Under the pieces are notes generated by a model. The model saw nothing but the letters and a program-made list of their open reading frames with translations. It searched no databases and had not been told where the DNA came from. The position numbers and the translations under genes are program-made. From assembly GCF_032191835.1 (NCBI RefSeq), contig NC_083240.1, positions 124,001 through 188,000 of the forward strand: a stretch of 64,000 bases of DNA. The letters are read 5' to 3'. The DNA is from Heteronotia binoei (Eukaryota). The first letter of the stretch is position 1, and every line of letters starts with the position of its first letter. Positions 4,788-52,614 of this stretch are shown here, piece by piece.

Positions 4788-5075
4788 AAGAAGAAGAAGA
4801 TAGAAGAAGAAGATATTGGATTTATATCCCGCCCTCCACTCCGAAGAGTCTCAGAGCGGCTCACAATCTCCTTTACCATCCTCCCCCACAACAGACACCC
4901 TGTGAGGTGGGTGGGGCTGGAGAGGGCTCTCCCAGCAGCTGCCCTTTCAAGGACAACTTCTGCCAGAGCTCTGGCTGACCCAAGGCCATTCCAGCAGGTG
5001 CAAGTGGAGGAGTGGGGAATCAAACCCGGTTTTCCCAGATAAGAGTCCACACACTTAACCACTACACCAAACTGG
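4788..5075 (-). mobile_element. tRNA-derived SINE with L2-like tail (Squam3/Ther1-like), full length
   Basis: Minus strand reads ccagtttggtgtagtggttaag (A box), GGTTTGATTCC-type B box, body, then gtgagccgctctgag...gagggcgggatataaat and a (tct)n tail. Confidence 0.85.
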
Positions 5076-5439
5076 TGATCCAATCAAAATACTGCTACAG
5101 GGAGTCAGTGGTTGAAGTGTAATGGACACTAGGGATGCTGCGCTGGGTATCGGGGACAGGCAAAGGTGGCCATGGCCAAGAGGTGGCCTTTGCTGATCCC
5201 AGGCTGGGTCTTGGTGGAGTCCACAGTGGCAACTAGCTCGAAGAGATCCATGAAGAAACCGGAAGCTGTATTATGTCTCAGCATATTTATCTGAGAGATG
5301 GTGTTCTCATTCAGCAAAGAAGTTTGCAAAATCCTTCGGGATCTGAGGCAGCCCCTTCCGTCACCCCACTTGCTCTGCTGCTGCCCTGGCCTTCTGGGAG
5401 AGGAGATGGGGGGGGAGCGAGGCGCCTGGCCCAGCAAGC

Positions 5440-5863
5440 CGGTTTAACTGCGGTGACGTAAGCGGGGGCTTCTTGTCAGCGGCCCCCGCAGCCACGGAGG
5501 GGATGCTGGGCTCGAGCAGCAGGGGCGTCTCCTCCTCCTCCGGCGGCCTTCCCTTCCCAACATGGCGGCCGGCTCGTCGCGCGGAGGGAGTCACGTGCCC
5601 CGCTCTGACAGGACAATCCCTGCGCCGCCGGGTTCTCCTCGCGTCACGTGACGACGGCTGCCGCACGCCTGCGCAGTGCCGGCGTTCGCCTTTTCCGACC
5701 GTCCCTGCCCTGCCCCTCCCTCCCTCCCGACCGGGACGGCGGCGGCAAGATGGCGGCGGAGACGGTGGCCTGGAGGACCCCGGCTCCGCGCGAAGGCGGC
5801 TCGGGCTTGTCGGGGCGGCCGCCGAGACTCCCGGAAGCGCTGTGAGGAGGCGGGCGGGGCGAG
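5440..5863 (+). promoter_or_regulatory. FBXO42 CpG-island promoter and probable non-coding exon 1 (donor GAG|GTGAGC, exon ends 5863)
   Basis: CpG island with palindromic E-box GTCACGTGAC (5643-5652), a second GTCACGTG (5590-5597), YY1-type CAA(C/G)ATGGCGGC at 5558-5569 and 5746-5757, ETS-like CCGGAAG at 5831, and a strong donor at 5864. The first coding exon at 12006 has a clean acceptor and so needs an upstream exon. Confidence 0.65.
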
Positions 5864-6005
5864 GTGAGCACCGGGGGGGGGGAGGGCCCTTTGCTCCCCC
5901 CGCTCTCTGCTCCCCACAGGCCGGGCCTGGACAGGCCACTCTCCCTGCCACGCGACGCCCCCAGCCCCTGCCTCGGGCTCACGGCTGCCCCTGAAAAGGA
6001 TGGCA

Positions 6006-8048
6006 GGTTTATACCCCGCCCTTCTCCCTGCATCGGAGCGGCTCACAATCGCCTCCTCCCCCCCCCCACAACAGACGCCCCGTGAGGTGGGTGGGGCTGA
6101 GAGGGCTCCCACAGCAGCTGCCCTTTCAAGCACAACCTCTGCCAGAGCTATGGCTGACCCAAGGCCATGCTAGCAGGTGCAAGTGGAGGAGTGGGGAATC
6201 AAGCCCGGTTCTCCCAGATAAGAGTCCGCTCACTTCACCACTATGGCTGACGCAAGGCCATGCTAGCAGGTGCAAGTGGAGGAGTGGGGAATCAAGCCCG
6301 GTTCTCCCAGATAAGAGTCCGCTCACTTCACCACTATGGCTGACGCAAGGCCATTCCAGCAGCTGCAAGTGGAGGAGTGGGGAATCAAACCCGGTTCTCC
6401 CAGATAAGAATCCGCTCACTTCACCACTAGGGCTGACCCAAGGCCATTCCAGCAGCTGCAAGGGGAGGAGTGGGGAATCAAACCCGGTTCTCCCAGATAA
6501 GAGTCTGCTCACTTAACCACTATGGCTGACCCAAGGCCATGCTAGCAGGTGCAAGTGGAGGAGTGGGGAATCAAGCCCGGTTCTCCCAGATAAGAGTCCG
6601 CTCACTTCACCACTATGGCTGACGCAAGGCCATTCCAGCAGCTGCAAGTGGAGGAGTGGGGAATCAAACCCGGTTCTCCCAGATAAGAGTCTGCTCACTT
6701 AACCACTATGGCTGACCCAAGGCCATGCTAGCAGGTGCAAGTGGAGGAGTGGGGAATCAAGCCCGGTTCTCCCAGATAAGAGTCCGCTCACTTCACCACT
6801 ATGGCTGACGCAAGGCCATTCCAGCAGGTGCAAGTGGAGAAGTGGGGAATCAAACCCGGTTCTCCCAGATAAGAGAGCTATGGCTGACCCAAGGCCATTC
6901 CAGCAGCTGCAAGTGGAGGACTGAGGAATCCAACCCGGTTCTCCCAGATAAGAGAGCTATGGCTGACCAAAGGCCATTCCAGCAGCTGCAAGTGGAGGAG
7001 TGGGGAATCAAACCTGGTTCTCCTAGATAAGAGAGCTCTGGCTGACCCAAGGCCATTCCAGCAGGTGCAAGGGGAGGAGTGGGGAATCAAACCCAGTTCT
7101 CCCAGATAAGAGTCCGCTCACTTAACCACTATGGCTGACCCAAGGCCATTCCATCAGGTGCAAGTGGAGGAGTGGGGAATCAAACCCAGTTCTCCCAGAT
7201 AAGATTCCGCTCACTTCACCACTATGGCTGACCCAAGGCCATTCCAGCAGGTGCAAGGGGAGGAGTGGGGAATCAAACCCAGTTCTCCCTGATAAGAATC
7301 CGCTCACTTCACCACTATGGCTGACCCAAGGCCATTCCAGCAGGTGCAAGTGGAGAAGTGGGGAATCAAACCCGGTTCTCCCAGATAAGAGAGCTATGGC
7401 TGACCCAAGGCCATTCCAGCAGCTGCAGGTGGAGGACTGGGGAATCCAACCCGGTTCTCCCAGATAAGAGAGCTATGGCTGACCAAAGGCCATTCCAGCA
7501 GCTGCAAGTGGAGGAGTGGGGAATCAAACCTGGTTCTCCTAGATAAGAGAGCTCTGGCTGACCCAAGGCCATTCCAGCAGGTGCAAGTGGAGAAGTGGGG
7601 AATCAAACCCGGTTCTCCCAGATAGGAGAGCTCTGGCTGACTCAAGGCCATTCCAGCAGCTGCAAGTGGAGGAGTGGGGAATCCAACCCGGTTCTCCCAG
7701 ATAAGAGAGCTATGGCTGACCAAAGGCCATTCCAGCAGCTGCAAGTGGAGGAGTGGGGAATCAAACCTGGTTCTCCTAGATAAGAGAGCTCTGGCTGACC
7801 CAAGGCCATTCCAGCAGGTGCAAGTGGTGAAGTGGGGAATCAAACCCGGTTCTCCCAGATAAGAGAGCTCTGGCTGACCCAAGGCCATTCCAGCAAGTGC
7901 AAGTGGTGGACTGGGGAATCCAACCCGGTTCTCCCAGATAAGAGAGCTATGGCTGACCCAAGGCCATTCCAGCAGCTGCAAGTGGGGAGTCAAACCTGGT
8001 TCTCCCAGATAAGAGTCTGCACACTTACCCACTACACCAAATTGGCTC
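6006..8048 (-). mobile_element. Squam3-like SINE with its 5' head expanded into a 22-unit tandem array (6148-8043)
   Basis: One 3' tail (~6006-6147) and one true 5' end (~8043). Between them, units start at 6148, 6241, 6334, 6427, 6520, 6613, 6706, 6799, 6878, 6957, 7036, 7129, 7222, 7315, 7394, 7473, 7552, 7631, 7710, 7789, 7868 and 7947 (93- and 79-bp periods). Confidence 0.9.
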
Positions 8049-10265
8049 TCTCTGCATCTCAAATGCCCCGAGCCTTCTCTGCAGGGTGACTCACACTCTT
8101 TCTGCTGGGGGCTGCCAGATCTGGAGAAATCTCCATATAAATCCCTTTGTCTTCTTCCGGCCTTGTCTTTGCTGTGCCATGTCTCAGAAACTGCTCTCCT
8201 TGGAGCTGCTGCCCTGCCAGGAGCTTTGCTGAGACAGGCAGGCTGCCAGCTGCTTTCCTTCACATGCCTTGCCTGCGCTGGTGACTTTGCCTTCTGAAAG
8301 ACTGCTCTTGCTGAAACTGAAACTGGGGGGGCATTTTTAGCATGTGCTTTGCTTCTCTTAGCTTCATGTGGTCAGTCTCTTTAGTCTATTTAGGCCAATA
8401 ACACTATCCCTGACTGGCAAAAGCTGTCCAGAATTTCAGGCAGAGTAAGGTTTTTCTCAGGACCTCAGCTAGGGGGTCACTCCTGAGGCATCCTGGCACA
8501 AACCACACCTTCTCTCCTAATTGATATATCCTCAGTCCGGGATCATCGTGTTCTAAAGTTGGAAATCCTGAAGCTGCCATATGATTTTAAAGATTGGCCT
8601 TAAATCCCATGTCCACAGATTCTATAAAAGGCAATTTTTGGAGAGCCACTGGAAGCCCTTTGCTTCAATCCCAGATGCACACATAGCAATTGTCATTAAG
8701 TGGGTGCTGACGCCAGTGCAGGTGAAGCCCACGTAAAGGCTTCAAAACTCTGGTATGAGTCAGATCTGATGTCTGGACATGGGCTGTACAAAATTATGCT
8801 TTTTTTAAAATGACCAGAATCATTCCTTGTGCATGTGTTTTAAATCCATTGCACTGAATTACACCTTTATTGTCAGTGTTGTTGTAAATAGCTTCATAAC
8901 ATTGTTTGTGATGAAAGAATACCCGTTTTTGGCAGAAAAAAAGGAAATATTATGGATTTTTTTCATTTTAGGCTGAAGATCTAGCAAAAGCAACCATAGT
9001 GTAGTAAGTTTGGGCTTCTATAGAAGGGTTCACTGTAGCATGGACAACTATAGCAAAATTTTTGCAGATGAAGTTGCCCAGGGATTTCAGTGTACCTGTC
9101 GAGCTTTAAGCACAGCTCCTAGTCATCTGAATGGTTGGGGTGTATGGCAAGCACTTTTGAGAGAAAGCTGGTAGGTGTGTGCATGCCCATTCAATGTCCC
9201 TTTGAGGTGCAAGTTCCCTGAACGCTCCCCATTGATATTATCTGGATCTAATCTGTATTCTTACATCTTTGCCAAAAACGGGGTTTTATTGGGGGTGGGG
9301 ATGGGTGCTTTGAACTGCTTTGCTGTGGCTTGTCTGTAGGGCAGAGGAAAAGAAACCTGTTGTCTTTGGCCCTCAGGCTTTACCCAAGGAGAAAACTGAA
9401 GGCTGCTGGCATCAGGTGATGGAGGCTGTGGCCATGGTGGCACCGCCGTTCAAACATGGAAGGCTGGCCCCTCCACTCAGCACGCCTGACTGTGCACTGG
9501 GTGGAGGGGGGGGGGAGGGCGGCAGTGGGACAAGCATGTGTGGGAAGGACCCAGAGTGCCCCACAGCTGCCTGCCTGGACCACTCACCCACCAGTCCCCC
9601 GCTACCGCTGTCCTTGGGAGACTTGCTCAGCTGCCGGCTCTGCCAGCCCACCCGGAGCTACTCGGCCAGCACCATCGAGGCCTTTGTGCAGGGCTTCTAG
9701 GGCTCCCCGGCAGCAGCAAGGCTGGACTCCGTCTCCCTAGAAGCCAGTGCAGAGTGAGCCAGGCTGCCTCCCATGTGTTCCCCGGTGTACTGGCTTGGCC
9801 CGCCCACCCGCCTCCCTTCCTTTCTCCTCCACATCTTGCCAGCTCCATGTGCCCTGGGGCAGGGAGCCACCTCCGCTTGCTTCCCAGTACATCCTGTCTG
9901 AGCAAAAGCCATCAGGGGGGGTGCCCCTTCGGAGTGCCAGGTGGGTTGGAAGAGCAGGTGCAGCCGGGGGAGGGGGAGAGGAGTGTCCAGCCCACCCTTC
10001 GTGGAGTTGCAGCTTGGCTTCCCTGATGCCACCAGCCAGGGAGAGGGTTCTTGCTGTGAGGAGGGGGGATTATTTTGCTGCAAGGAGGCAGCTACTGCCA
10101 GCCCCCTGCCCCCCAAACAAAAATGCTGTCCCTGTGCCCCTCCAAACTTTAAATCCTAGCTACAGCCCTCCTATGATGGCTTACCTTGCATAACTTTTAG
10201 GCACTGAAACGCTAAAAATGTTGCAGGAGAAACCACAATGCTTTGGTTCTTCCTTCCAAGTAAGC

Positions 10266-10533
10266 GTGGCTGTAGTCTGCTTGTGTGTGAGGGGAGGGTG
10301 GTATCCAGTGCTGCCTGGCACAGGGCTTGCTCAACCTGGACACCCTCGCTTCAGGAAGCAGGTTCTGCAGAAGCCCATGGGACTTGGCAGTCAGTGACCA
10401 GTGGCTGCAGTCTGCGTGTGTGTGGGGGGGGGGGATCCAGTGCTGCCTGGCACAGGGCTCGCTCAACCTGGACACTCTCGTTTCAGGAAGCAGGTTCTGC
10501 AGAAGCCCATGGGACTTGGCAGTCAGTGACCAG
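10266..10533. repeat. 135-bp direct tandem duplication in FBXO42 intron 1
   Basis: gtggctg.agtctgc...gacttggcagtcagtgaccag at 10266 and again at 10401. Confidence 0.85.
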
Positions 10534-11983
10534 CCTGGTTCCACTTCTCAGGACTCTTGTTGCTTGAAGGGATGGATGTGGCTGGTGTTTTTGGGCAGGG
10601 CTTGACCCTCCTGCCTTTGTCCTTCCAGCTGCTGAAAGAGTTTACTGTAGGAAAACTGAAGGCATTCTGGTTATCAGGCTAGGTAATTCTTGGCAAGGAG
10701 TCAGCAGGAATGTACCCTGCTTTGGCTCTCTGCTCCAAGCAGCAGAAGAAACAGAACTTCCAAAGCCATGCCCAGCCAGGCAGCATTGACTGGCCCTGCA
10801 TGGGCTTGCTTAAAACTCCTTCTGGCCACTAAAGGGGCCTGGGATCCTAGGGCCACTTCCCTTCGTCCCCTTGAATGCGGAAGGATGTTGCTAGGCCCTT
10901 GCTCTGTTCATTCGTCCTTCTTGTGGCTGCTCACTTCCAGGCTGGAGCCTCAGCTGCTCCCCTCCTCACCCCAGTGCCCCAGCTGGCGGTTTTGCTCATC
11001 CGCACACAGACATGTCCTGGCTGGGGTGAGGAACGGTGATCGTCTTCCTCTCCTGCAGCTGCCTGAAATGCCCCCTAAAGTCCTGCTCCTGGGAGGAGTC
11101 TTTGCTCTCTCAGATCCCCACTCAAAGAAAGCAACGGTCAGGAAAGTCCTCTTCTGGCTTCTTGTTTGACTGCCTGCCGGAAGGCCCTTCAAGGACCTCA
11201 TAGGGCTGCAGAACCCAAACGCAGCTCTGCTCTGGGGGCGGGGCTTGGAGGCCAGCCTTCTCTGCTGGGGCTCAGGGGAGGGTGTCTTCTCCCCTCGATG
11301 CAACCCCATGAGCCAGGAGGACTGTGGAGAGTGGGTTTGGTCAGCCAGCAGCTGCAGCAGGCATGAACCACCCCCTGGCTGGCTGGCTGCCATAGAGCTG
11401 CTCAGGTGGCTCTGTTTTTGGTGGGGATTATGGGGCACGAGAGGGCAGAGGGCAGCCTCATCTGCAGCACTGGGCAAGAGGAGCTTTCAGGTCCCTTGCC
11501 CGCCTGCTCCAGAGCCCCTCCCGGCCAGAGAAGCTGGGCACACTGCTGGCAGTCCTGATGTGGGTGAGTGGCCTGCTCCCTGTCCCTCCCTCCTTGTGGC
11601 TGTGCCTGGCAGGAGCCATCGCGGGAGGCAGGGGAGGTGTGGCGGCTGCTGCTGGTCTCTGTTCCGGAGACCATCAGCACTTCCTGCGCATGGGAGGCGG
11701 GCCAGAGCCGTGGGTGTCTGCAGCATGGGTGCAGGGCTTGAAGGGGAGGGAGGAGCAGCTCTTTGAGCCCAGAGAGCAGAGTCTGTCAGGTCTTGGACAT
11801 GTCCAGCTGCCTTTCTGCTCACCCCTCCCCAAGAGAGAGTTACGACAGTACAGATGGGGGGAGAGGTCCCTTGGGAGGCTGCCAAGGGCATGATCCTGGG
11901 GCGGGGAGGGGGCTCTTCCCTCAAGCACTGTTATTTGGGGGGGGGCAGAGTCACAGCAGCCGGGTGTTGTGAGGCACATGTGA

Positions 11984-23517
<11,534 letters not shown>

Positions 23518-25070: not shown

Positions 25071-25949
25071 GAATTAGCCGTGGCTGTTCTGGGCCGGTAG
25101 CTTGGCCACAGCCTGTGGGTACAGGGGCTAGCAGCTGCAAGAGACAGTGGCCTTACCATGGGGAGAGGGCAGCCTCTTGCCAAAGCCATGCCACTTAAAA
25201 GCATCCAACTGCTCTCAGGACTTCCAGGGAGGAGAGACTTTGGGGTGAGATCTGCTGTGCGGGAAGGGCGGGAGGGGGTGCTCACACCCTTCCCACTGTG
25301 AGTAATGTGATGCAGGGGCATTGCTCACCATGTTACAAAATCGGGTTGTGTTGCAGTTTTAAACTAAGCTTGCTCAGCTGCCCTCTGGTCTGGTTCCTTA
25401 TTCTAGAAACGGGGTGGTGTGTGTGTGTGGTGGGGAGGGGGGTTAAACGCAAACCTGGGCGTTATTAACTCATAGTGGGGCCAGCGGTGTGTTGAGCTGC
25501 GCTGCCTCAAATAGCCAGGCAGAAACGTTCTTTGTGCGCTGGGGGTGAGCCTGGGCTTGTCGCGGGCCCTCACACGCATTGTGGCAAAGAAGGACTCCTC
25601 CTCAGCCTTGAGAATGCGGACGCCTCTTGTGCCCCCTTCCCCCTTTGTGCGTGGAGTAGGCCGGAGATCCGAAGACAGTCCGGCAGCCTTAAGTTCTGAC
25701 TCTTGCGGCAACCTTCTGCAAGCCAGACCGAGGCGGCGGCGGCGGCTACGAAAGCTTGGAGAGAAGTGTGAGTGGCCCAAGGTCACCCGGCTGGCTGCAT
25801 GTAGAGAAGTGCAGGCTGGGCCCCAGTTCCTCGCCCCCCCCGGGCTCCCTGCTGCGGGAGAGGAGAGAAGGCTGCGCCGGTGGGCCTTCCACGTGGGGGG
25901 GTCCCGTGGGTGCTGCGGAGTCGCCCCCTCCCCGCTACGACACAGGCAG

Positions 25950-26210
25950 GGCGCCCATACAGCCTGGGCCCTGTTTGCGCCTGCGCTACTGGGCGCGCCT
26001 GGATGACGCCACGACGCCGGAGCGCGGCGGGGCGGAAGTGCGTGAGGCGAGGGGCCGCGGGGCGCGTGAGGGTGGGGGGAGCGTGTCCGGCGCGGATTGT
26101 GTTGCCAACCTCCAGGCGGGGGCTGGAGATCTCCCGGGATGCCATCTGCTCTCCTGCGCTTGTGCGCATGACTGGCCGGGAGGGAGATCGGCCTCCCTTC
26201 GCCCCGCCAT
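25950..26210 (+). promoter_or_regulatory. CPLANE2 CpG-island promoter region
   Basis: CpG-rich sequence directly 5' of the ATG, with GC box plus ETS (ggcggggcggaagtg, ~26027-26041), a GTTGCCAAC RFX-like half site (26101-26109) and TGCGCATG (26163-26170). Confidence 0.5.
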
Positions 26211-29200
26211 GCTCGTGCCCCCCGGATCCGTGGTGGTGCTGGACTGGCACAAGAGCCCAGAGGCCGAGCGCTACTTTGCGACTGTCCTGCAGCGGCGGCA
26301 GAAGCGCAGAGCCTTTGGTGAGGGGGAGGAGGCGGGAGGCGGAGGCGGCCCTTGCAGGAGGGAGAGAGAGAAGGCGGGCTGCCCCCCACCGCCCCAGAGA
26401 AGGGAGGGAGGAGGGAGGGAGGGAAGGCAGGGTGCGGCCCTTGCAGGAGGGAGGGAGGGAGAGAAGGCAGGCTGCCCCCCACCGCCCCAGAGAAGGGAGG
26501 GAGGAGGGAGGGAGGGAAGGCAGGGTGCGGCCCTTGCAGGAGGGAGGGAGGGAGAGAAGGCAGGCTGCCCCCCACCGCCCCAGCAGGAGGTAGGGAGAGA
26601 AGGCAGGAGGCGGAGGCGGCCCTTGCAGGAGGGAGGGAGGGAAGGCAGGCTGCCCCCCACCGCCCCAGAGAAGGGAGGGAGGAGGGAGGGAGGGAAGGCA
26701 GGCTGCCCCCCACCGCCCCAGCAGGAGGGAGGGAGGGAGGGCAGGAGGCGGAGGCGGCCCTTGCAGGAGGGAGGGAGGGAGGGAGAGAAGGCGGGCTGCC
26801 CCCCACCGCCCCAGAGAAGGGAGGGAGGAGGGAGGGAGGGAAGGCAGGCTGCCCCCCACCGCCCCAGCAGGAGGGAGGGAGGGAAGGCGGGCTGCCCCCC
26901 ACCGCCCCAGAGAAGGGAGGGAGGAGGGAGGGAGGGAAGGCAGGCTGCCCCCCACCGCCCCAGCAGGAGGGAGGGAGGGAGGGAGGGAAGGCAGGGTGCC
27001 CCCCACCGCCCCAGAGAAGGGAGGGAGGAGGGAGGGAGGGAAGGCAGGCTGCCCCCCACCGCCCCAGCAGGAGGGAGGGAGGGAAGGCGGGCTGCCCCCC
27101 ACCGCCCCAGAGAAGGGAGGGAGGAGGGAGGGAGGGAAGGCAGGCTGCCCCCCACCGCCCCAGCAGGAGGGAGGGAGGGAGGGAGGGAAGGCAGGGTGCC
27201 CCCCACCGCCCCAGAGAAGGGAGGGAGGAGGGAGGGAGGGAAGGCAGGCTGCCCCCCACCGCCCCAGCAGGAGGGAGGGAGGGAGGGAGGGAAGGCAGGG
27301 TGCCCCCCACCGCCCCAGAGAAGGGAGGGAGGAGGGAGGGAGGGAAGGCAGGCTGCCCCCCACCGCCCCAGCAGGAGGGAGGGAGGGAGGGAGGGAAGGC
27401 AGGGTGCCCCCCACCGCCCCAGAGAAGGGAGGGAGGAGGGAGGGAGGGAAGGCGGGCTGCCCCCCACCGCCCCAGCAGGAGGGAGGGAGGGAGGGAGGGA
27501 AGGCAGGGTGCCCCCCACCGCCCCAGAGAAGGGAGGGAGGAGGGAGGGAGGGAAGGCAGGCTGCCCCCCACCGCCCCAGCAGGAGGGAGGGAGGGAGGGA
27601 AGGCAGGCTGCCCCCCACCGCCCCAGAGAAGGGAGGGAGGAGGGAGGGAGGGAAGGCAGGCTGCCCCCCACCGCCCCAGCAGGAGGGAGGGAGGGAGGGC
27701 AGGAGGCGGAGGCGGCCCTTGCAGGAGGGAGAGAGAGAAGGCGGGCTGCCCCCCACCGCCCCAGAGAAGGGAGGGAGGAGGGAGGGAAGGCAGGGTGCGG
27801 CCCTTGCAGGAGGGAGGGAGGGAGAGAAGGCAGGCTGCCCCCCACCGCCCCAGCAGGAGGGAGGGAGGGAAGGCAGGAGGCGGAGGCGGCCCTTGCAGGA
27901 GGGAGAGAGAGAAGGCGGGCTGCCCCCCACCGCCCCAGAGAAGGGAGGGAGGAGGGAGGGAAGGCAGGGTGCGGCCCTTGCAGGAGGGAGGGAGGGAGAG
28001 AAGGCAGGCTGCCCCCCACCGCCCCAGCAGGAGGGAGGGAGGGAAGGCAGGAGGCGGAGGCGGCCCTTGCAGGAGGGAGAGAGAGAAGGCGGGCTGCCCC
28101 CCACCGCCCCAGAGAAGGGAGGGAGGAGGGAGGGAAGGCAGGGTGCGGCCCTTGCAGGAGGGAGGGAGGGAGAGAAGGCAGGCTGCCCCCCACCGCCCCA
28201 GCAGGAGGCAGGGAGAGAAGGCAGGAGGCGGAGGCGGCCCTTGCAGGAGGGAGGGAGGGAGAGAAGGCGGGCTGCCCCCCACCGCCCCAGCAGGAGGGAG
28301 GGAGGGAGGGAGGGAAGGCAGGGTGCCCCCCACCGCCCCAGAGAAGGGAGGGAGGAGGGAGGGAGGGAAGGCAGGCTGCCCCCCACCGCCCCAGCAGGAG
28401 GCAGGGAGAGAAGGCAGGAGGCGGAGGCGGCCCTTGCAGGAGGGAGGGAGGGAGAGAAGGCAGGCTGCCCCCCACCGCCCCAGCAGGAGGCAGGGAGAGA
28501 AGGCAGGAGGCGGAGGCGGCCCTTGCAGGAGGGAGGGAGGGAGAGAAGGCGGGCTGCCCCCCACCGCCCCAGCAGGAGGGAGGGAGGGAAGGCAGGGTGC
28601 CCCCCACCGCCCCAGAGAAGGGAGGGAGGAGGGAGGGAGGGAAGGCAGGCTGCCCCCCACCGCCCCAGCAGGAGGGAGGGAGAGAAGGCAGGAGGCGGAG
28701 GCGGCCCTTGCAGGAGGGAGGGAGGGAGGGAGAGAAGGCAGGAGGCGGCCCCCAGCAGGAGGAAGGAAAGGCAGGGTGCCCCCCACCGCCCCAGCAGGAG
28801 GGAGGGAGGAGGGAGGGAGGGAAGGCAGGGTGCCCCCCACCGCCCCAGAGAAGGGAGGGAGGAGGGAGGGAGGGAAGGCAGGGTGCCCCCCACCGCCCCA
28901 GCAGGAGGGAGGGAGAGAAGGCAGGGTGCCCCCCACCGCCCCAGAGAAGGGAGGGAGGGAAGGCAGGAGGCGGAGGCGGCCCTTGCAGGAGGGAGAGAAG
29001 GCAGGGTGCCCCCCACCGCCCCAGCAGGAGGGAGGGAGGGAGAGAAGGCAGGGTGCCCCCCACCGCCCCAGAGAAGGGAGGGAGGGAAGGCAGGAGGCGG
29101 AGGCGGCCCTTGCAGGAGGGAGAGAAGGCAGGCTGCCCCCCACCGCCCCAGCAGGAGGGGGATGCGGAGGCGGCCTTTGCAGGAGGGGGGGCCCTGGCCT

Positions 29201-31193
29201 TGCAGACCTTGGGACCTCCACAGCTGGCTGCTGCGCGTGGGTGGCAGCCGTGCCGCTGGACAAGCCCTGTGCATGCTCAGGCCAAGGTCGATTCGCCTGT
29301 CGCTTCCCAGGGCTGCTGGAGAGGCCGGTGCTCCCACCGCCAGCCGTTGCCGCCACTGCCAGCTACAAGGTCTTCGTGTCAGGGAAGAGTGCGGTGGGCA
29401 AGTCTGCTCTGGTGGCCTCCCTGGGGGGTCTGCCGGTCCCCTCAGCCCATCATGAGACAACAGGTGAGGCTTCAGTTCCCCAGCCTGTCCAATGGGAGGG
29501 AGGGTCTCTGGGAGAAGAGACAAGGGAAAACTTCTGGAGGGAGTGCAAAGAGCTTCCTTTGCTGAAGGGCACTGAGAAGGCGGGTGAGTGAAGGGCAGCA
29601 GGAAGGGAGATCCCATGCAGCGCAGAAGAGGCAGCTGGAAGGCACACATGGGCCAAAGAGATTCTTTCCTGAATTCTGGGTCCTCGGAACTGCCGCTATT
29701 GTGTGGGTTTTTAAAAAGTCACGATAGGGCAAATTCCATATTTACTTGGGCTGCGGTATGTAAGCCACTGGATTCACAGAATCCTTCCTCAGACGCTTCT
29801 GCTCAATTAGGCGTTCTGCGAATTTCAGAAAGCATTCCCCTACAGCAGGGGTGGCCAACGGTAGCTCTCAAGATGTTTTTGCCTACAACTCCCATCAGCC
29901 CCAGCCAACATGGCCAATGACTGGGGCTGATGGGAGTTGTAGGCAAAAAAACATCTGGAGAGCTACTGTTGGCTACCCCTGCCCTACAAAGCTGTTTCAC
30001 GTATCCTGTGTCTGGTGTCATTTGGAGCCAGCGGAAGCACTTCTGAAGTGCTGGGAGCCGGACGCCTGTCTTTGTGACGCTTCCTGATATGTGCAGGCCC
30101 TGTGAAGTGGTTCTCTTGCAGGGATCCAGACGACGACCGTGTATTGGGCAGCCAAGCTGTGTGAGAGCAGCAGGCCCCTGTTCTTCAAGTTCACGTTCTG
30201 GGACTGCGGGGAGTCTGTGCTGAAGAAGTTTGATCACATCCTGCCGGTGAGTGCGGGGCAGTTGGCACCAAGAGGGAGGGAGGGAGGGAGGGGACCTTTC
30301 TCATCAGGGATCCTCGTTGCCCTCCAACCACCCCCAGGCCTGCACCCAGAATGTGGATGGCTTCCTCCTCCTCTTCTCCTTCACCGACCGGGCCTCTTTT
30401 GATGACTTGCCGAGCCAGATCTCTCGCGTGACGGATGGAGCTGAGAAGGCTGTCAAAATAGTCATCGGCACCAAATATCCTTTAATACTGGCACGCTCAT
30501 GACACTCTGCTCTGACACTTTTCTTAATGCTTCCCTTGAGAAGGGGAAAGTACTTTTTGCATCCTCAGAGCCACAGGATCACTGTAGAGGTGGATATTTG
30601 CCTATTGAACAGCTGAGACACACCCATTTGCCCGGAGAGGTCCATCTGGAAAGGTGCTGCTCCAGCTTGGTCTTCCTCTGAGGTCCGGGGGGGGGGGGGG
30701 GGCGGGGGCTACTCTACTAGTGATGGGGGGGCATGGTTCATATAGGGAAATGCCCAGCAGTGCTTGGTAGGCAGAGGGTCCCAGGAGCAATGCCAGGTAG
30801 CGTCTCCCAAATGACAAGAAGGTCCCTTCTTTGTGTGTGTGTGTGTGTATGTGTGTATGTCTGGGGCCCCGGAGTGCTGCTGTCAGCCATTCCCAGGAAG
30901 TTGGCAGGGGGTATCTGACCCTCAAAAGAAGGCAGCTTGACATGGCTGGAGGCCCCCTTCCTTAACTCCTCTCCAGGTTTGACCAGTTTGCACACACGGA
31001 CGTCACGGAGCGTGACATAGCTGCCTTCCGCCTCACTTGGGGGCTGCCGGTGCTGCGAGCAAAGAGCACCCGCCCCCCGGACAGCTGCACCGGCCTGTCA
31101 GACGTGGCCCACCTTCTGAACAGGCTTGCTGAGCACCTGTGGCGGCAGGACCAGTGGGCAGCGGGCCTTCTCCCCCCCGCCCCGCAGGCCTAG
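26209..31193 (+). CDS. CPLANE2: Ciliogenesis and planar polarity effector 2 (RSG1 small GTPase), 5 exons, 246 aa
   Basis: Exons 26209-26317, 29311-29463, 30122-30246, 30338-30474, 30977-31193 (741 nt, in frame). P-loop GKSAVGKS, FWDCGES, FSFTDRASFDDLP, VIGTKFDQ match recalled RSG1. Intron 4 is U12-type (AT...AG). Confidence 0.95.
26330..29190. repeat. Modular G-rich minisatellite filling CPLANE2 intron 1
   Basis: Shuffled modules gg(c/g)tgccccccaccgcccc, agagaagggagggaggagggaggga, agcaggagggaggga and gaggcggaggcggcccttgcagg. A 174-bp higher-order unit occurs three times (27721, 27895, 28069). Confidence 0.95.
29846..29981. mobile_element. Palindromic hAT-type MITE in CPLANE2 intron 2
   Basis: TIRs caggggtggccaac / gttggctacccctg; 8-bp TSD ccctacag / ccctacaa. 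Confidence 0.82.
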
Positions 31194-33160: not shown

Positions 33161-33375
33161 ATATATGAATATATGAAGCTGCCTTATACTGAATCAGACC
33201 TTTGGTCCATCCAAGTCAGTATTGTCTTCTCAGACTGGCAGTGGCTCTCCAGGGTCTCAAGCTGAGGTTTTTCACACCTATTTGCCTGGACCCTTTTTTG
33301 GAGATGCCAGGGATTGAACCTGGGACCTTCTGCTTCCCAAGAAGATGCTCTACCACTGAGCCACCGTCCCTCCCC
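33161..33375 (-). mobile_element. Second tRNA-derived SINE family (CR1-like 3' tail)
   Basis: Minus strand: ggtggctcagtgg (A box), ggttcaatcc (B box), then gatggaccaaaggtctgattcagtataaggcagcttcatatattc tail. Confidence 0.7.
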
Positions 33376-33744
33376 ACTGGAGGATCTATAAGTCGCTGTG
33401 TATAAACTGGTTATAGTGGCCCTTGTTAAGGTAAACTGCTGCTTATAGTGGCCCTCAAATTTAATACTTTAATGTAAGCCATTGATCCACTGACACATAG
33501 TCCTACAGCTCCCTTGCGATAAGGTTTTTTTATTATTTGGCTTTAACTGATCTTAACTCTTCAAAAGTTTCTAAGTTTGAGGTTTTAATTTTTTTTTCAC
33601 TGTTACTTTCCTGAGAGCTGAGTATCTAAGGAATTTGTCTGAATGTTAACCAAGTTCCTCCCTGTCAAACTGGATAATTAGCCAGCATCCTCAGCGTCTC
33701 TCCCTAGAATGAAGGTAATCTTAGTCTGAACTGGCTTTGTTACG

Positions 33745-33898
33745 AGAGAGCTCTCCCAGCAGCTGCCCTTTCAAGGACAACCTCTGCCAGAGCTCTGGCT
33801 GACCCAGGGCCATTCTAGCAGCTGCAAGTGGAGGCGTGAGATATCAAACCTGGGTCTCCCAGATAAGAGTCTGCTCACTTCACCACTACACCAAACTG
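33745..33898 (-). mobile_element. Squam3-like SINE, 5' half
   Basis: Same head and body sequence as the 4788-5075 copy. Confidence 0.75.
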
Positions 33899-48420: not shown

Positions 48421-48658
48421 AAAAAGAAGAGGAGGAGATTGGATTTATATCCTGCCCATCACTCAGAGGGGCTTGCAGTCTCCTTCCCTTTCTCTCCCCA
48501 GAACAGACACCCTGGGAGGCAGGTGGGGCTGAGAGAGCTCGGAGAGAACCGGGACTGCCCCAAGGTTACACCAGCAGCTGCATGTGGAGGAGGAGGGAAT
48601 CAAACCTGGTTCTCCCAGATTAGAGTTTGTACTCTTAACCATTAGAACAAACTGGCTC
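48421..48658 (-). mobile_element. Squam3-like SINE (diverged, shorter variant)
   Basis: Purine tail, ggatttatatcctgccc, cagacaccctg...gtggggctgagagagctc, gggaatcaaacctggttctcccagat. Confidence 0.75.
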
Positions 48659-49179: not shown

Positions 49180-49995
49180 GTCTAGAAATCTAGGTAAAGA
49201 CTGTGTCTTGGATCCCCCTTGGCCACGTGCTTGTTCACCCCCTCAACCAGGTCAGTGAGAGAAGATCTTTCTTTGCAGAACCCCTGATGAGTCTTCCTCA
49301 ATAGCTTTGGTTCATCAATGGGCCTACTAATTCTATCTTTAATAACGAATTCCACCACTTTACCCCAAATTGGCTTGAGACTGACTGTCCTGTAGTTTCT
49401 CTGCTCTCCACTGGAACCTTTTTTAAAGATGGGGGTTAAATTCGCTGTCTTCCAGTCCTTTGGGGTGGAGGCGAGATGTTGTGATAGTTTTGTCAGGAGA
49501 TCCACACGTTCACCTGTGAGTTGATGATGATGGTGATGAGGATATATCCCGCCCTCCACTCCAAATCTCAGAGTGGCTCACAATCTCCTTTATCTTCCTC
49601 CCCCACAACAGACACCCTGTGAAGTGGCTGGGGCTGAGAGAGCTCAAGGACAACCTCTGCTGAGCCAAAGCCATTGTAGCAGGTGCAAGTGGAGGAGTGG
49701 GGAATCAACCCCGGTTCTCCCAGATAAGAGTCCGTGCACTTAACTACTACATCCAACTGGCTCTTTCAGAACTCTTGGAGGTGTGCTATCTGGGCCTGGT
49801 GATTGGTCAGTTTTTAATTTGCCCATCAGTCATAGCCCCCCCTCTCTCATCACTTCAATCTGACTCAGGTCTTTTAATGCCCCTTCTGAAATCCCTGCTT
49901 CTGGAGTGGGCAAGCACCCCCCCTCCTCCACAGTGAAGAAGGAGGCAAAAAAGGCATTCAGCTTCTCTGCCATTTCCCTACCCTCCTTCTTTATA
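49180..49995 (-). mobile_element. CR1 LINE RT fragment, interrupted by a SINE
   Basis: DWKTANLTPIFKKGS...NYRTVSLKPIWGKVVE and AEKLNAFFASFFT; frameshifted. Confidence 0.75.
49525..49762 (-). mobile_element. Squam3-like SINE interrupting a CR1 fragment
   Basis: (gat)n tail, atatcccgccctccactcc, then head ending taactactacatccaactggctct. Confidence 0.75.
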
Positions 49996-51261: not shown

Positions 51262-51730
51262 AGGAGGAGGAGAAGAAGAAGATACTGGATTTGGATCCCA
51301 CCCTGTGCTCCGAATCTCAGAGTGGCTCACGATCTCCTTTCCCTTCCCCCCCACCCCAACAGACGCCCTGTGCAGTGAGTGGGGCTGAGAGAGCTTTTAC
51401 AGCAGCTCCCTTCCTAGGACAACCTCTGCCAGAGCTATGGCTGGCCCAAGACCACTCCAGCAGCTGCAAGTGGAAGAGGGGGTAATCAAACCTGGTTCTC
51501 CCAGATAAGAGTCCGCTCACTTAACCACTATGGCTGACCCAAGGCCATTCCACCAGCTGCAAGTGAAGGAGTGGGGAATCAAACCCGGGTCTCCCAGATA
51601 AGAGTCCGCTCACTTCACCACTATGGCTGTCCCAAGGCCATTCCATCAGCTGCAAGTGGAGGAGGGGGTAATCAAATCCGGTTCTCCCAGATAAGAGTCC
51701 CAGCACTTAACCCCTACACCCAATTGGCTC
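51262..51730 (-). mobile_element. Squam3-like SINE with a triplicated 93-bp head
   Basis: Head units start at 51435, 51528 and 51621, with the same junction (ccacta|tggctg) as the 6148 array. Confidence 0.8.
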
Positions 51731-52614
51731 TTGAGATACAGAGGGGTAGGTCAGGCCGCGGGCGGGCGGGCGAGGGGTGCAGGCGGTTGGGCTGAAGGTG
51801 GGCCGGGAGGGAGGGAGGGAAGAGGGTCCCGCCTGCGCGGAGTCCCCCCCCCCGCCCCCCACCTAGGGGGGCTGGATGGAGCCAAGGGGCGCCACTAGAG
51901 GCCGCTGCGGAGAGAAGGCGGCCCCTGCCTGCAGGGCCCAAGAGGGCCAGCGCGTTTTGGCTCCCCCCCGGCCCAGCCCCATCCCCAGCAGAGTCTTCAG
52001 GGAGGGAAGCAAGCGGCTGCCAGCAGCCAGCGAAGACAGGCGGGCGGAACCGGATCCGCTTCCCGTTCACTAGAAGGCGCTACTGCCCTTGCAAGCCGCC
52101 CGCCGGGACCGGACTCTGCCCTCCTCCCCCCCCCCCCCGCGGCAAGGCTGACGGCAGAAGCGCAGCAGCGACGGGGCGCCCGGGCCAGGCGAGGGAGGGG
52201 GGAGGAGAGCCGGCCTGCCCGGCAGCTCCGGCCCTCGGGACGTGCTCAGAGGCGCAGCTGTGGCTTGGGGCGAGGCGGCTTCTCCCGGGTGGGGGGGGGA
52301 GGCGGCGGCGGCAGGGAGGGCTGGAACGCGCGGTCCACCTGCAGCCCCCCTGTGACGACCCACCGACTCCTCGTGGAAGGAGGTGAACGGGAGGGGGGTG
52401 GCCATTGCTTGCCTCTGGACGGTAGCCCTGGAGTTCCTCGGTGGTCTCCCCTCCAAATACTGAGCGGGCAGACCGTGCTGAGCCTCCCCCCACCCCGGAC
52501 AGGGCAGCCAGTTGCCCCTCCCTCGACTCTTTCCGTTTTGGCTGCTACAGCCTTTTCCCTGGCTGCTCTCCCATTCACAGGCACTAGGGGGCAGTGGAGC
52601 CCTGTATCTGTATG

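What the first reader, a model, noticed from the sequence alone, without database searches (positions are those of the whole stretch)
6148..8043. A SINE's tRNA-derived Pol III head amplified into a 22-unit array beside the FBXO42 promoter
A single SINE (one tail, one 5' end) has its head tandemly expanded: 7x93 bp, 3x79 bp, 3x93 bp, 8x79 bp, then the terminal unit. A 516-bp higher-order block recurs (6842 vs 7358). Each junction sits on a microhomology in the SINE consensus: 'cta' for the 93-mer and 'agag' for the 79-mer. Every unit keeps a GG(T/C)TTGATTCC/GGTTGGATTCC-type B box. The 93-mers keep a partial A box; the 79-mers lose it. The result is ~22 candidate TFIIIC sites starting ~285 bp from the exon-1 donor, pointing antisense at the promoter. 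It could act as a TFIIIC insulator or boundary, or as a Pol III antisense source (inference).
Basis: partly seen in the sequence, partly recalled or inferred. Interest (0 to 1): 0.75.

Follow-up and report, generated by a model that had tools for sequence, protein, structure and literature searches.

The report
SINE-head minisatellite in gecko FBXO42 intron
A gecko jumping element (a Squam3 SINE) in the first intron of FBXO42 has had its front part copied 22 times in a row; this is a real example of the already published "SINE-derived satellites" of lizards and snakes, and nothing suggests it does anything.

Summary
Window 6148-8043 holds 7x93, 3x79, 3x93 and 8x79 bp units plus a terminal unit. 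All lie inside one minus-strand SINE (about 5993-8050) with one 5' end and one tail.

The host gene is FBXO42. Exon 1 ends at 5863, 285 bp before the array, so the array sits in intron 1, just outside the CpG island.

The SINE is a Squam3 (B3-like) element. Arrays of Squam3 pieces that include box B were published as SINE-derived satellites, sSat3 (Vassetzky 2023, PMC10702118). That study did not cover this species or the 79/93-nt units.

The 93-nt junction is not private to this locus. A three-headed copy at 51317-51731 has the same junction and the same internal-head marker. Earlier notes of this scan report similar arrays on other DNA of this genome (56x79 bp at TFIP11, six units at EIF4A1).

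The functional reading is not supported:
- No unit keeps the box-B cytosine C56 that TFIIIC contacts (13 have GGTTTGATTCC, 4 carry C56G).
- The array is CpG-depleted (o/e 0.19).
- RNA reads lying on it come from other SINE copies.

Most likely this is a young, neutral minisatellite grown by unequal exchange or slippage. It is a new member of a known kind, of low interest.

The parts
5400..5863 (+). FBXO42 CpG-island promoter and non-coding exon 1 (exon ends at 5863; GT donor at 5864-5865)
   Evidence: GC is 71-76% and CpG o/e 0.62-1.09 over 5400-6000. A same-species RNA contig covers 5783-5863 with 0 differences and then leaves the stretch exactly at 5863 (record 9).
5993..6147 (-). Body (CORE-like part, B3-type insert, L2-derived region) and decayed tail of the Squam3 SINE
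   Evidence: It aligns to five other window copies. The published sSat3/Squam3 motif matches at 6064-6088 with 2 mismatches. The only T4 run on the SINE strand is at 5994-5997.
6148..6798 (-). Seven 93-bp head units (u1-u7), SINE positions about 19-111
   Evidence: u1, u5 and u7 are identical. 6427-6612 against 6613-6798 is 98.4% alike.
6799..7035 (-). Three 79-bp units (u8-u10), the first copy of the 237-bp trimer
7036..7314 (-). Three 93-bp units (u11-u13)
7315..7946 (-). Eight 79-bp units (u14-u21), further copies of the 237-bp trimer
   Evidence: TRF period 237 with 96% matches. Block identities are 95-98.7%.
7947..8050 (-). Terminal unit with the SINE's true 5' end and A box. It has an 8-nt deletion after box B and lacks the GTGAGC marker of the internal 93-mers.
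12006..12249 (+). FBXO42 exon 2 (ATG at 12023, F-box). It defines intron 1 as 5864-12005.
   Evidence: Pfam F-box, E=3e-10. PDB 9o04_C 'F-box only protein 42', E=5.4e-19. The acceptor was read from the sequence and is not confirmed by reads.
51317..51731 (-). Second multi-head Squam3 copy: three heads joined by the same 93-type junction, then body and tail
   Evidence: Its internal head h2 is 92.6% (maximum 94.6%) identical to the array's 93-mers.

Best explanation
A Squam3 (gecko B3-like) SINE sits antisense in intron 1 of FBXO42. The part of its head that holds box B has been amplified into a 22-unit minisatellite. It is a SINE-derived satellite of the sSat3 class.

Two junctions define the units:
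- SINE position about 111 joined back to about 19, across the microhomology TAG (93-nt unit).
- Position about 115 joined back to about 36, across CT (79-nt unit).

The 93-type unit was probably already present in the element, or in its source subfamily, when it arrived. The array then grew and was reshuffled locally by unequal sister-chromatid or homologue exchange, or by replication slippage. The traces are a 237-bp trimer copied four times, a register shift of 516 bp, and identical 93-mers.

It is most likely selectively neutral. It is a methylated, CpG-decaying stretch of intron next to the promoter's CpG island but outside it, not a TFIIIC platform.

Shown: the anatomy, the SINE family, the gene context, the loss of C56, the CpG depletion, and the recurrence of the junction. 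Inferred: the mechanism of growth, the pre-insertion origin of the 93-mer, and neutrality.
For: Anatomy.

SINE family:
- Window copies share the head, a CORE-like segment, an L2-derived region and (CTT)n tails.
- They match short motifs taken from the published Squam3B and sSat3_Gja consensus rows.

Class: Vassetzky 2023 describes tandem Squam3 pieces that include box B, longer terminal units that reach a SINE terminus, alternating two- or three-unit subvariants, and rare loci with both termini.

Youth and local growth: array units are 91.6% alike on average (93-mers 94.0%) against 82.5% for dispersed copies, and some units are identical.

Family-level 93-mer:
- The same junction occurs twice at 51515 and 51608.
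- Internal heads at both loci carry GTGAGC, while both 5' heads do not.
- RNA-library contigs of the same species span both junction types with 2-3 mismatches.

Against function:
- There is no canonical box B in the array. Variants are T at C56 in 18 units and G in 4.
- CpG o/e is 0.19, against 0.6-1.1 in the island.
- Three of the four consensus CpG columns show TpG/CpA variants, spread by block duplication.
- There is no Rfam tRNA hit at E<=1, while a real tRNA at 33299 scores 47.5 bits. ARAGORN finds none in the array.
Against: - No reads from the assembled individual could be laid, so the copy number and the array itself rest on the assembly alone.
- The pre-insertion origin of the 93-mer rests on two loci in one window.
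- The family's own box B reads GGTTTGATTCC in every window copy and in the published gecko sSat3_Gja2 consensus. If active source genes carry T56, this variant may still bind TFIIIC.
- Earlier notes of this scan place another such array at a promoter (TFIP11). This could hint at non-random location, or could simply reflect what first readers choose to report.
- Neutrality is inferred, not measured.
Confidence: 0.8

Rival explanations
1. The array is a cluster of TFIIIC binding sites (like ETC sites, tDNA or B2-SINE boundary elements) that insulates or organises the FBXO42 promoter.
For: There are 22 box-B-like 11-mers within 2 kb, 285 bp from the exon-1 donor. TFIIIC binding to SINEs near Pol II genes is known in mammals (PMC3744447 and PMC3245943, titles). 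The family's own box B has T at position 56, so this variant may work in source genes.
Against: - C56 is lost in every unit, and four units carry the C56G change known to cut yeast TFIIIC affinity 370-fold.
- The array is CpG-depleted and still decaying, outside the island.
- The same kind of array is a common, variable, apparently neutral satellite class in squamates.
- No binding data exist.
Confidence: 0.05
2. The heads act as Pol III promoters and produce antisense RNA running toward the FBXO42 promoter.
For: The terminal unit keeps an A box and a box-B-like motif. The 93-mer junctions rebuild a 9-of-11 A box about 40 nt upstream of each box B. RNA reads lie on the array in both directions.
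Against: - 751 of the 775 laid RNA reads are only 95-99% alike and 501 fit only partly. Their loose ends lead into other SINE copies. The unique intron next to the array (8152-9000) has zero depth.
- The SINE strand has no T4 terminator before 5994, so a transcript would be up to 2 kb long, which is atypical for Pol III.
- C56 is lost.
Confidence: 0.03
3. The array is an assembly artefact. The real locus holds a monomeric or few-unit SINE, or the unit number is wrong.
For: No DNA reads of the assembled individual were available. The two DNA runs laid are other species and cover only SINE sequence. Satellite copy numbers are often mis-assembled, as PMC10702118 notes.
Against: - The array has an ordered, non-degenerate structure: two unit types, diagnostic variants, a trimer higher-order repeat, and clean unique flanks.
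- The nearest N run is at 18160, about 10 kb away.
- Both junction types occur in independent RNA-library contigs of the same species, and the 93-type occurs at a second locus.
Confidence: 0.07
4. Purely local origin: a monomeric SINE inserted, and both junctions and all units arose at this locus from its own head.
For: There is one 5' end and one tail. Both junctions sit on microhomologies found in a monomer. Block duplications are clearly local.
Against: - The locus's own 5' head differs from the 93-mers at 4 of the 17 head-specific positions (GTGTGCAG against GTGAGCGG), while units otherwise differ by about 6%.
- The same junction and marker occur at 51.5 kb, whose internal head is as close to the array's 93-mers (92.6%) as they are to each other (94.0%).
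Confidence: 0.2

Closest known systems
Squam3-derived satellites (sSat3) of squamates, Vassetzky, Kosushkin & Ryskov 2023 (PMC10702118)
   Same: - Tandem units are cut from a Squam3 SINE and are shorter than the SINE.
- As in the snake unit, they cover the 3' part of the head with box B plus the start of the body.
- A longer terminal unit runs to the SINE terminus.
- Locus-specific subvariants alternate in twos or threes.
- Units are more alike than dispersed SINE copies.
   Different: - Units are 79 and 93 nt with their own junctions, against 67 nt in snakes and 126-151 nt in the four geckos studied.
- Two unit types are interleaved in one locus.
- Both SINE termini are kept, which the paper calls uncommon.
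- The species, given as Bynoe's gecko in earlier scan notes, was not analysed in that paper.
- The array lies in a genic intron next to a CpG island, whereas the paper reports a subtelomeric tendency.
Squam3 SINE, subfamily B/B3 (Vassetzky 2021, PMC7983390)
   Same: tRNA-derived head, CORE fragment, L2-derived 3' region and (CTT)n tail. Sibling copies are about 255-270 nt long, as in gecko Squam3B3.
   Different: The focal copy has a decayed tail and a 2-kb expanded head. The internal heads carry a GTGAGC marker that the published consensus rows do not show.
TFIIIC-bound SINEs, tDNAs and ETC sites acting as boundaries (e.g. PMC3744447; structure in PMC11811891)
   Same: Clustered box-B-like motifs of a tRNA-derived element close to a Pol II promoter.
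   Different: The contacted C56 is missing in all units. No binding, open chromatin or insulation is shown. The array is CpG-depleted.
Multimeric SINEs and VNTR-bearing retroelements (dimeric Alu, Dip/B1 multimers, SVA VNTR)
   Same: A repeated internal module within a non-autonomous retroelement. A multi-head form may be propagated, since two loci share a junction.
   Different: Whole-element multimers keep their tails and 5' ends; here only a head segment repeats. Retrotransposition of a multi-head form is not demonstrated.

Membership tests
Squam3 SINE | tRNA-derived head with A and B boxes at the 5' end | tested here: met
   The published 5' motif (sSat3_Gja2 row) matches at 8022-8046 with 2 mismatches and at five other copies. 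A-box-like TGGTGTAGTGG and a box-B-like 11-mer are present.
Squam3 SINE | CORE fragment followed by an L2-derived 3' region (ACCTCACAGGGTGT...GGGCGGGATATAAA) | tested here: met
   The 25-nt published motif matches at 6064-6088 (2 mismatches) and in four sibling copies, with 0 hits expected by chance. Alignment against the consensus rows. This was a comparison by eye and by short motifs.
Squam3 SINE | (CTT)n tail of the B subfamilies | tested here: inconclusive
   Sibling copies at 4821 and 15503 end in TCTTCTTCTT. The focal copy ends in TCCTTTTC only.
SINE-derived satellite (sSat3) | [quoted passage not shown] | tested here: met
   There are 21 internal units of 79 or 93 nt.
SINE-derived satellite (sSat3) | A terminal unit extended to a SINE terminus | tested here: met
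   Both termini are present: the 5' end at about 8050 and body plus tail over 6147-5993.
SINE-derived satellite (sSat3) | The same unit present at many loci of the genome (satellite-like family) | tested here: inconclusive
   The 93-type junction occurs at a second locus in the window. Junction-spanning RNA-library contigs carry mismatches. Earlier scan notes report 79-bp arrays elsewhere, which I did not check. No genome-wide census was possible.
TFIIIC site (box B / ETC) | Box B GGTTCRANNCC with the contacted bases G53, T55, C56, G57 | tested here: not met
   There are 0 matches in the array and 2 elsewhere in the window. Units read GGTTTGATTCC x13, GGCTTGATTCC x4, GGTTGGATTCC x4 and GGTTTGACTCC x1. 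The role of C56 is taken from PMC11811891.
TFIIIC site (box B / ETC) | TFIIIC occupancy in vivo | not testable with these tools
   No ChIP or CUT&RUN data for this species.
Type-2 Pol III transcription unit | A box plus B box 30-60 nt apart, then a T4+ terminator within a few hundred nt, and a detected transcript | tested here: not met
   The A box is complete only in the terminal unit. The first T4 on the SINE strand is at 5994, up to 2 kb downstream. No reads specific to this locus were found. There are no Rfam or ARAGORN tRNA hits.
FBXO42 (host gene) | F-box plus Kelch protein orthologous to FBXO42 | tested here: met
   Exon 2 matches PDB 9o04_C 'F-box only protein 42' at E=5.4e-19 and the last exon at E=1.6e-175. 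Pfam finds F-box and Kelch. Exons were searched separately by reference.

The most novel reading that the evidence does not exclude
Arrays of degenerate box-B units seeded by a multi-head Squam3 subfamily recruit TFIIIC, and with it condensin or cohesin, despite the T56 variant. On this reading the source genes of the family work with T56. Arrays next to CpG-island promoters, such as this one in FBXO42 and reportedly one at TFIP11, would then act as length-variable boundary or tethering elements.
Probability: 0.05. Interest if true: 0.7.

Novelty: new member of a known kind. Interest (0 to 1): 0.22.

Why it matters
It adds a well-resolved example, in a gecko species not covered by the 2023 survey, of how a SINE turns into a satellite. 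Two microhomology junctions, a trimer higher-order repeat and both SINE ends are preserved in one locus.

There is also a hint that the first duplication travelled with the element, because a second locus shares the junction and an internal-head marker. That hint bears on whether sSat arrays are seeded by retrotransposition of multi-head SINEs. [quoted passage not shown]

For gene regulation it matters little unless TFIIIC binding is shown.

Tried and rejected
- ARAGORN and Rfam (E<=1) find no tRNA-like element in the array, although Rfam finds a tRNA at 33299.
- Single-strand DNA folding of the 79- and 93-nt units on both strands is no better than shuffles (z from -1.8 to +0.5). There is no support for hairpin-driven slippage.
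- The promoter and terminator scan is of bacterial type and uninformative here.
- Read laying: the two DNA runs are other species and give zero depth on the unique flanks. They therefore give no test of the assembly, of length polymorphism, or of presence at the orthologous locus. RNA depth on the array comes from other SINE copies.
- Exon 1 and exon 2 could not both fit in one 6-kb stretch, so the splice joint itself was not seen. Only the exact break of an RNA contig at 5863 was seen.
- The search of earlier findings by sequence was blank.
- The large protein searches were not used. The array's open frames (for example 7394-8263 on the minus strand) are repeat artefacts, and using them to fish for arrays in other assemblies did not justify the cost.
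- Independent tandem insertions of whole SINEs were rejected, because the units lack tails and 5' ends and share identical junctions.
- No N stretch was filled or looked up.

Full report
**1.
From 6148 there are seven 93-bp units, three 79-bp units, three 93-bp units, eight 79-bp units and a terminal unit.

TRF scores the whole as 20.8 copies of period 93 (score 2061). It also sees a 237-bp period with 96% matches.

Unit 1 continues natively into one SINE body and tail, from 6147 down to about 5993. The window's N runs are far from the array; the nearest is at 18160.

**2. Higher-order structure.**
- The 79-mers form a three-unit (237-bp) higher-order repeat present four times: u8-10, u14-16, u17-19 and u20-22. 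The copies are 95-98.7% alike.
At offset 516 the match is about 97% over 330-400 bp (u7-u10 against u13-u16) and 82% over the full 516 bp. This looks like one unequal exchange with a register shift of 3x79 + 3x93.
- Among the 93-mers, u1, u5 and u7 are identical. 6427-6612 against 6613-6798 is 98.4% alike.

**3. Junctions.**
The 93-nt unit is SINE position about 19-111.

The 79-nt unit is about 36-115. Its junction reads GCCATAG-CTCTCT-TATCTGG. The native body has ...TAGCTCT|GGCAG and the head has ...GGACTCT|TATC. The overlap is therefore 2 nt (CT) in a CT run, not a clean 4-nt 'agag'.

The 79-mer carries body bases (CTCT) that the 93-mer lacks. The 93-mer carries head bases (19-35) that the 79-mer lacks. 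Neither unit can derive from the other alone; each junction needed a native head or body end.

A simple path (inferred):
1. A 93-type array forms first.
2. One exchange between the body-proximal CTCT and an upstream head creates the 79-type junction.
3. That junction then expands from within and is reshuffled by unequal exchange.

**4. The host gene is FBXO42 and the array is in intron 1.**
- The ORF piece at 12023-12247 has an F-box (Pfam). It matches PDB 9o04_C 'F-box only protein 42' at E=5.4e-19.
- The last coding exon (to 23517) matches the same chain at E=1.6e-175.
- Exons were searched separately by reference.
- A 325-nt RNA contig from a run of the same species lies on 5783-5863 with no difference and leaves the stretch exactly at 5863. 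GT follows at 5864-5865 (record 9).
The SINE tail ends about 130 bp after the donor.
- The exon-2 acceptor (..cccag|C at 12005/12006) is read from the sequence only.
- The CpG island covers about 5400-6000, with GC 71-76% and CpG o/e 0.6-1.1. The array lies outside it.

**5. The SINE is a Squam3 element.**
Local BLAST and alignment find six more copies in the window, at 4821, 15503, 33744, 48444, 49543 and 51317, all on the minus strand. They share:
- a tRNA-like head;
- a CORE-like stretch;
- an extra insert of about 33 nt;
- an L2-type 3' region;
- (CTT)n tails.

I checked the family against the papers.

The Squam3B row in the supplement of Vassetzky 2021 (PMC7983390) and the sSat3_Gja rows in the supplement of Vassetzky 2023 (PMC10702118) show the same head, CORE and 3' region. 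Two short motifs taken from those rows hit the focal SINE and its siblings, with 0 hits expected by chance. Length and tail fit the gecko-specific B3 sub-subfamily.

I did not align the full published consensus, because that would have meant typing a long sequence.

**6. It belongs to a published class.**
Vassetzky et al. 2023 describe "SINE-derived satellites" in 56 squamate genomes. Their description covers:
- tandem units cut out of Squam1, Squam2 or Squam3;
- a 67-nt unit in snakes covering box B and the start of the body;
- diverse units of 126-151 nt in geckos;
- a longer terminal unit that reaches a SINE end;
- rare loci with both ends;
- alternating two- or three-unit subvariants;
- greater homogeneity in longer loci.

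The present array fits all of this. It differs in its unit sizes and junctions, in mixing two unit types, in the species (not among their four geckos), and in sitting in a genic intron rather than near a telomere.

Earlier notes of this scan report further arrays on other DNA of this genome: 56x79 bp at TFIP11, a six-unit Squam3 repeat at EIF4A1, and others. I could not inspect those sequences.

**7. The first duplication is probably not private to this locus.**
- The copy at 51317-51731 has three heads joined by the same 93-type junction.
- At both loci the internal heads carry GTGAGC where the locus's own 5' head has GTGTGC or GTGCTG. C to A is not a CpG-decay change.
- A monomer at 33744 also has GTGAGC, so this is a subfamily marker.
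- The internal head h2 at 51.5 kb is 92.6% (maximum 94.6%) identical to the array's 93-mers. They are 94.0% identical to each other.
- RNA-library contigs of the same species span both junction types with 2-3 mismatches, most simply from other loci (records 11-15).

This favours a multi-head element, or a source subfamily, that already carried the 93-type junction, followed by local growth. It rests on two loci and is an inference. [quoted passage not shown] A genome census here would be worth doing.

**8. The functional reading is not supported.**
- The canonical box B GGTTCRANNCC occurs twice in the window and never in the array.
- The units read GGTTTGATTCC (13), GGCTTGATTCC (4), GGTTGGATTCC (4) and GGTTTGACTCC (1). 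C56 is lost in all 22 and replaced by G in four.
- The human TFIIIC structure paper lists this C and the next G among the bases contacted specifically. It recalls that C56G lowers yeast TFIIIC binding 370-fold (PMC11811891; see also PMC11724288).
- A caveat: all window copies and the published gecko consensus also have T at this position. This may be CpG decay of copies, or it may be the state of working source genes.
- The array has CpG o/e 0.19, like the surrounding non-island DNA. Three of its four consensus CpG columns show TpG/CpA variants that were then copied with their blocks. This is the signature of germline methylation.
- The SINE strand has no T4 run until 5994, so a Pol III transcript from a head would be up to 2 kb long.
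- Of the 775 raw RNA reads laid, 751 are only 95-99% alike and 501 fit only partly. Their loose ends lead into other SINE 5' ends. The unique intron beside the array (8152-9000) has zero depth.
- Rfam and ARAGORN see no tRNA in the heads, while Rfam scores a real tRNA at 33299 at 47.5 bits.

None of this excludes binding. It does mean that "22 candidate TFIIIC sites" overstates what the sequence shows.

**9. What could not be done.**
The two DNA runs laid are other species. They cover only SINE sequence and have no depth on the unique flanks. The assembly of the array, its length polymorphism and its presence in relatives therefore remain untested.

The ordered variant pattern, the clean flanks and the independent occurrence of both junctions argue against a gross artefact. 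The unit count should still be treated as provisional.

**10. Verdict.**
The best explanation (confidence about 0.8) is a young, neutral SINE-derived minisatellite of the sSat3 class in FBXO42 intron 1. It is a new member of a known kind, of low interest.

The only point of moderate interest is the possible multi-head source subfamily. The TFIIIC boundary idea keeps about 5% probability.

Noticed in passing
window 51317-51731 (-): A Squam3 copy with three heads joined by the same 93-type junction as the array. Heads 1 and 3 share GATTACCCCCTC, and heads 2 and 3 share GTGAGCGG. This points to a mosaic history or a multi-head source element.
   Followed up: partly
window 4821-5075, 15503-15770, 33744-33898, 48444-48658, 49543-49767, 51317-51731, 5993-8050: All seven copies of this SINE in the window lie on the minus strand. 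The focal copy is antisense to FBXO42. The strands of the genes that host the other copies were not checked.
   Followed up: no
window 18475-21135 (+): An uninterrupted 886-aa ORF with a reverse-transcriptase domain (Pfam RVT_1, E=1e-32). It looks like a LINE inside an FBXO42 intron, directly after the N run at 18160-18389.
   Followed up: no
window 25403-29649: About 4 kb of very GC-rich tandem repeat that stays open in several frames on both strands (ORFs of 800-1300 aa). It lies between the FBXO42 3' end and CPLANE2.
   Followed up: no
window 33299-33371 (-): A tRNA-like gene: Rfam tRNA 47.5 bits, ARAGORN Pro(GGG), with a canonical box B (GGTTCAATCCC). It lies 370 bp from a Squam3 copy. It could be a real tRNA gene or the head of another SINE family.
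   Followed up: partly
window 6148-8043 (+): On the FBXO42 sense strand each unit offers an acceptor-like TTCTCCCAG|A and a donor-like CAG|GTGCAA. That gives 22 potential cryptic 5'-UTR exons of 38 or 52 nt. No splice joint into the array was listed among the RNA reads.
   Followed up: partly
window 5803 and 5838: All RNA reads of run X23 differ from the window at two exon-1 positions (G>C and C>G, 7 of 7 reads each), while the contig of run X2 is identical. The runs labelled as one species seem to include diverged lineages.
   Followed up: no
window 5863-5916 (+): Weak mirtron-family hits (mir-1281 at E=0.11, mir-1224 at E=0.27) at the very start of intron 1. Both are far below the gathering scores and are probably chance in GC-rich sequence.
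   Followed up: no
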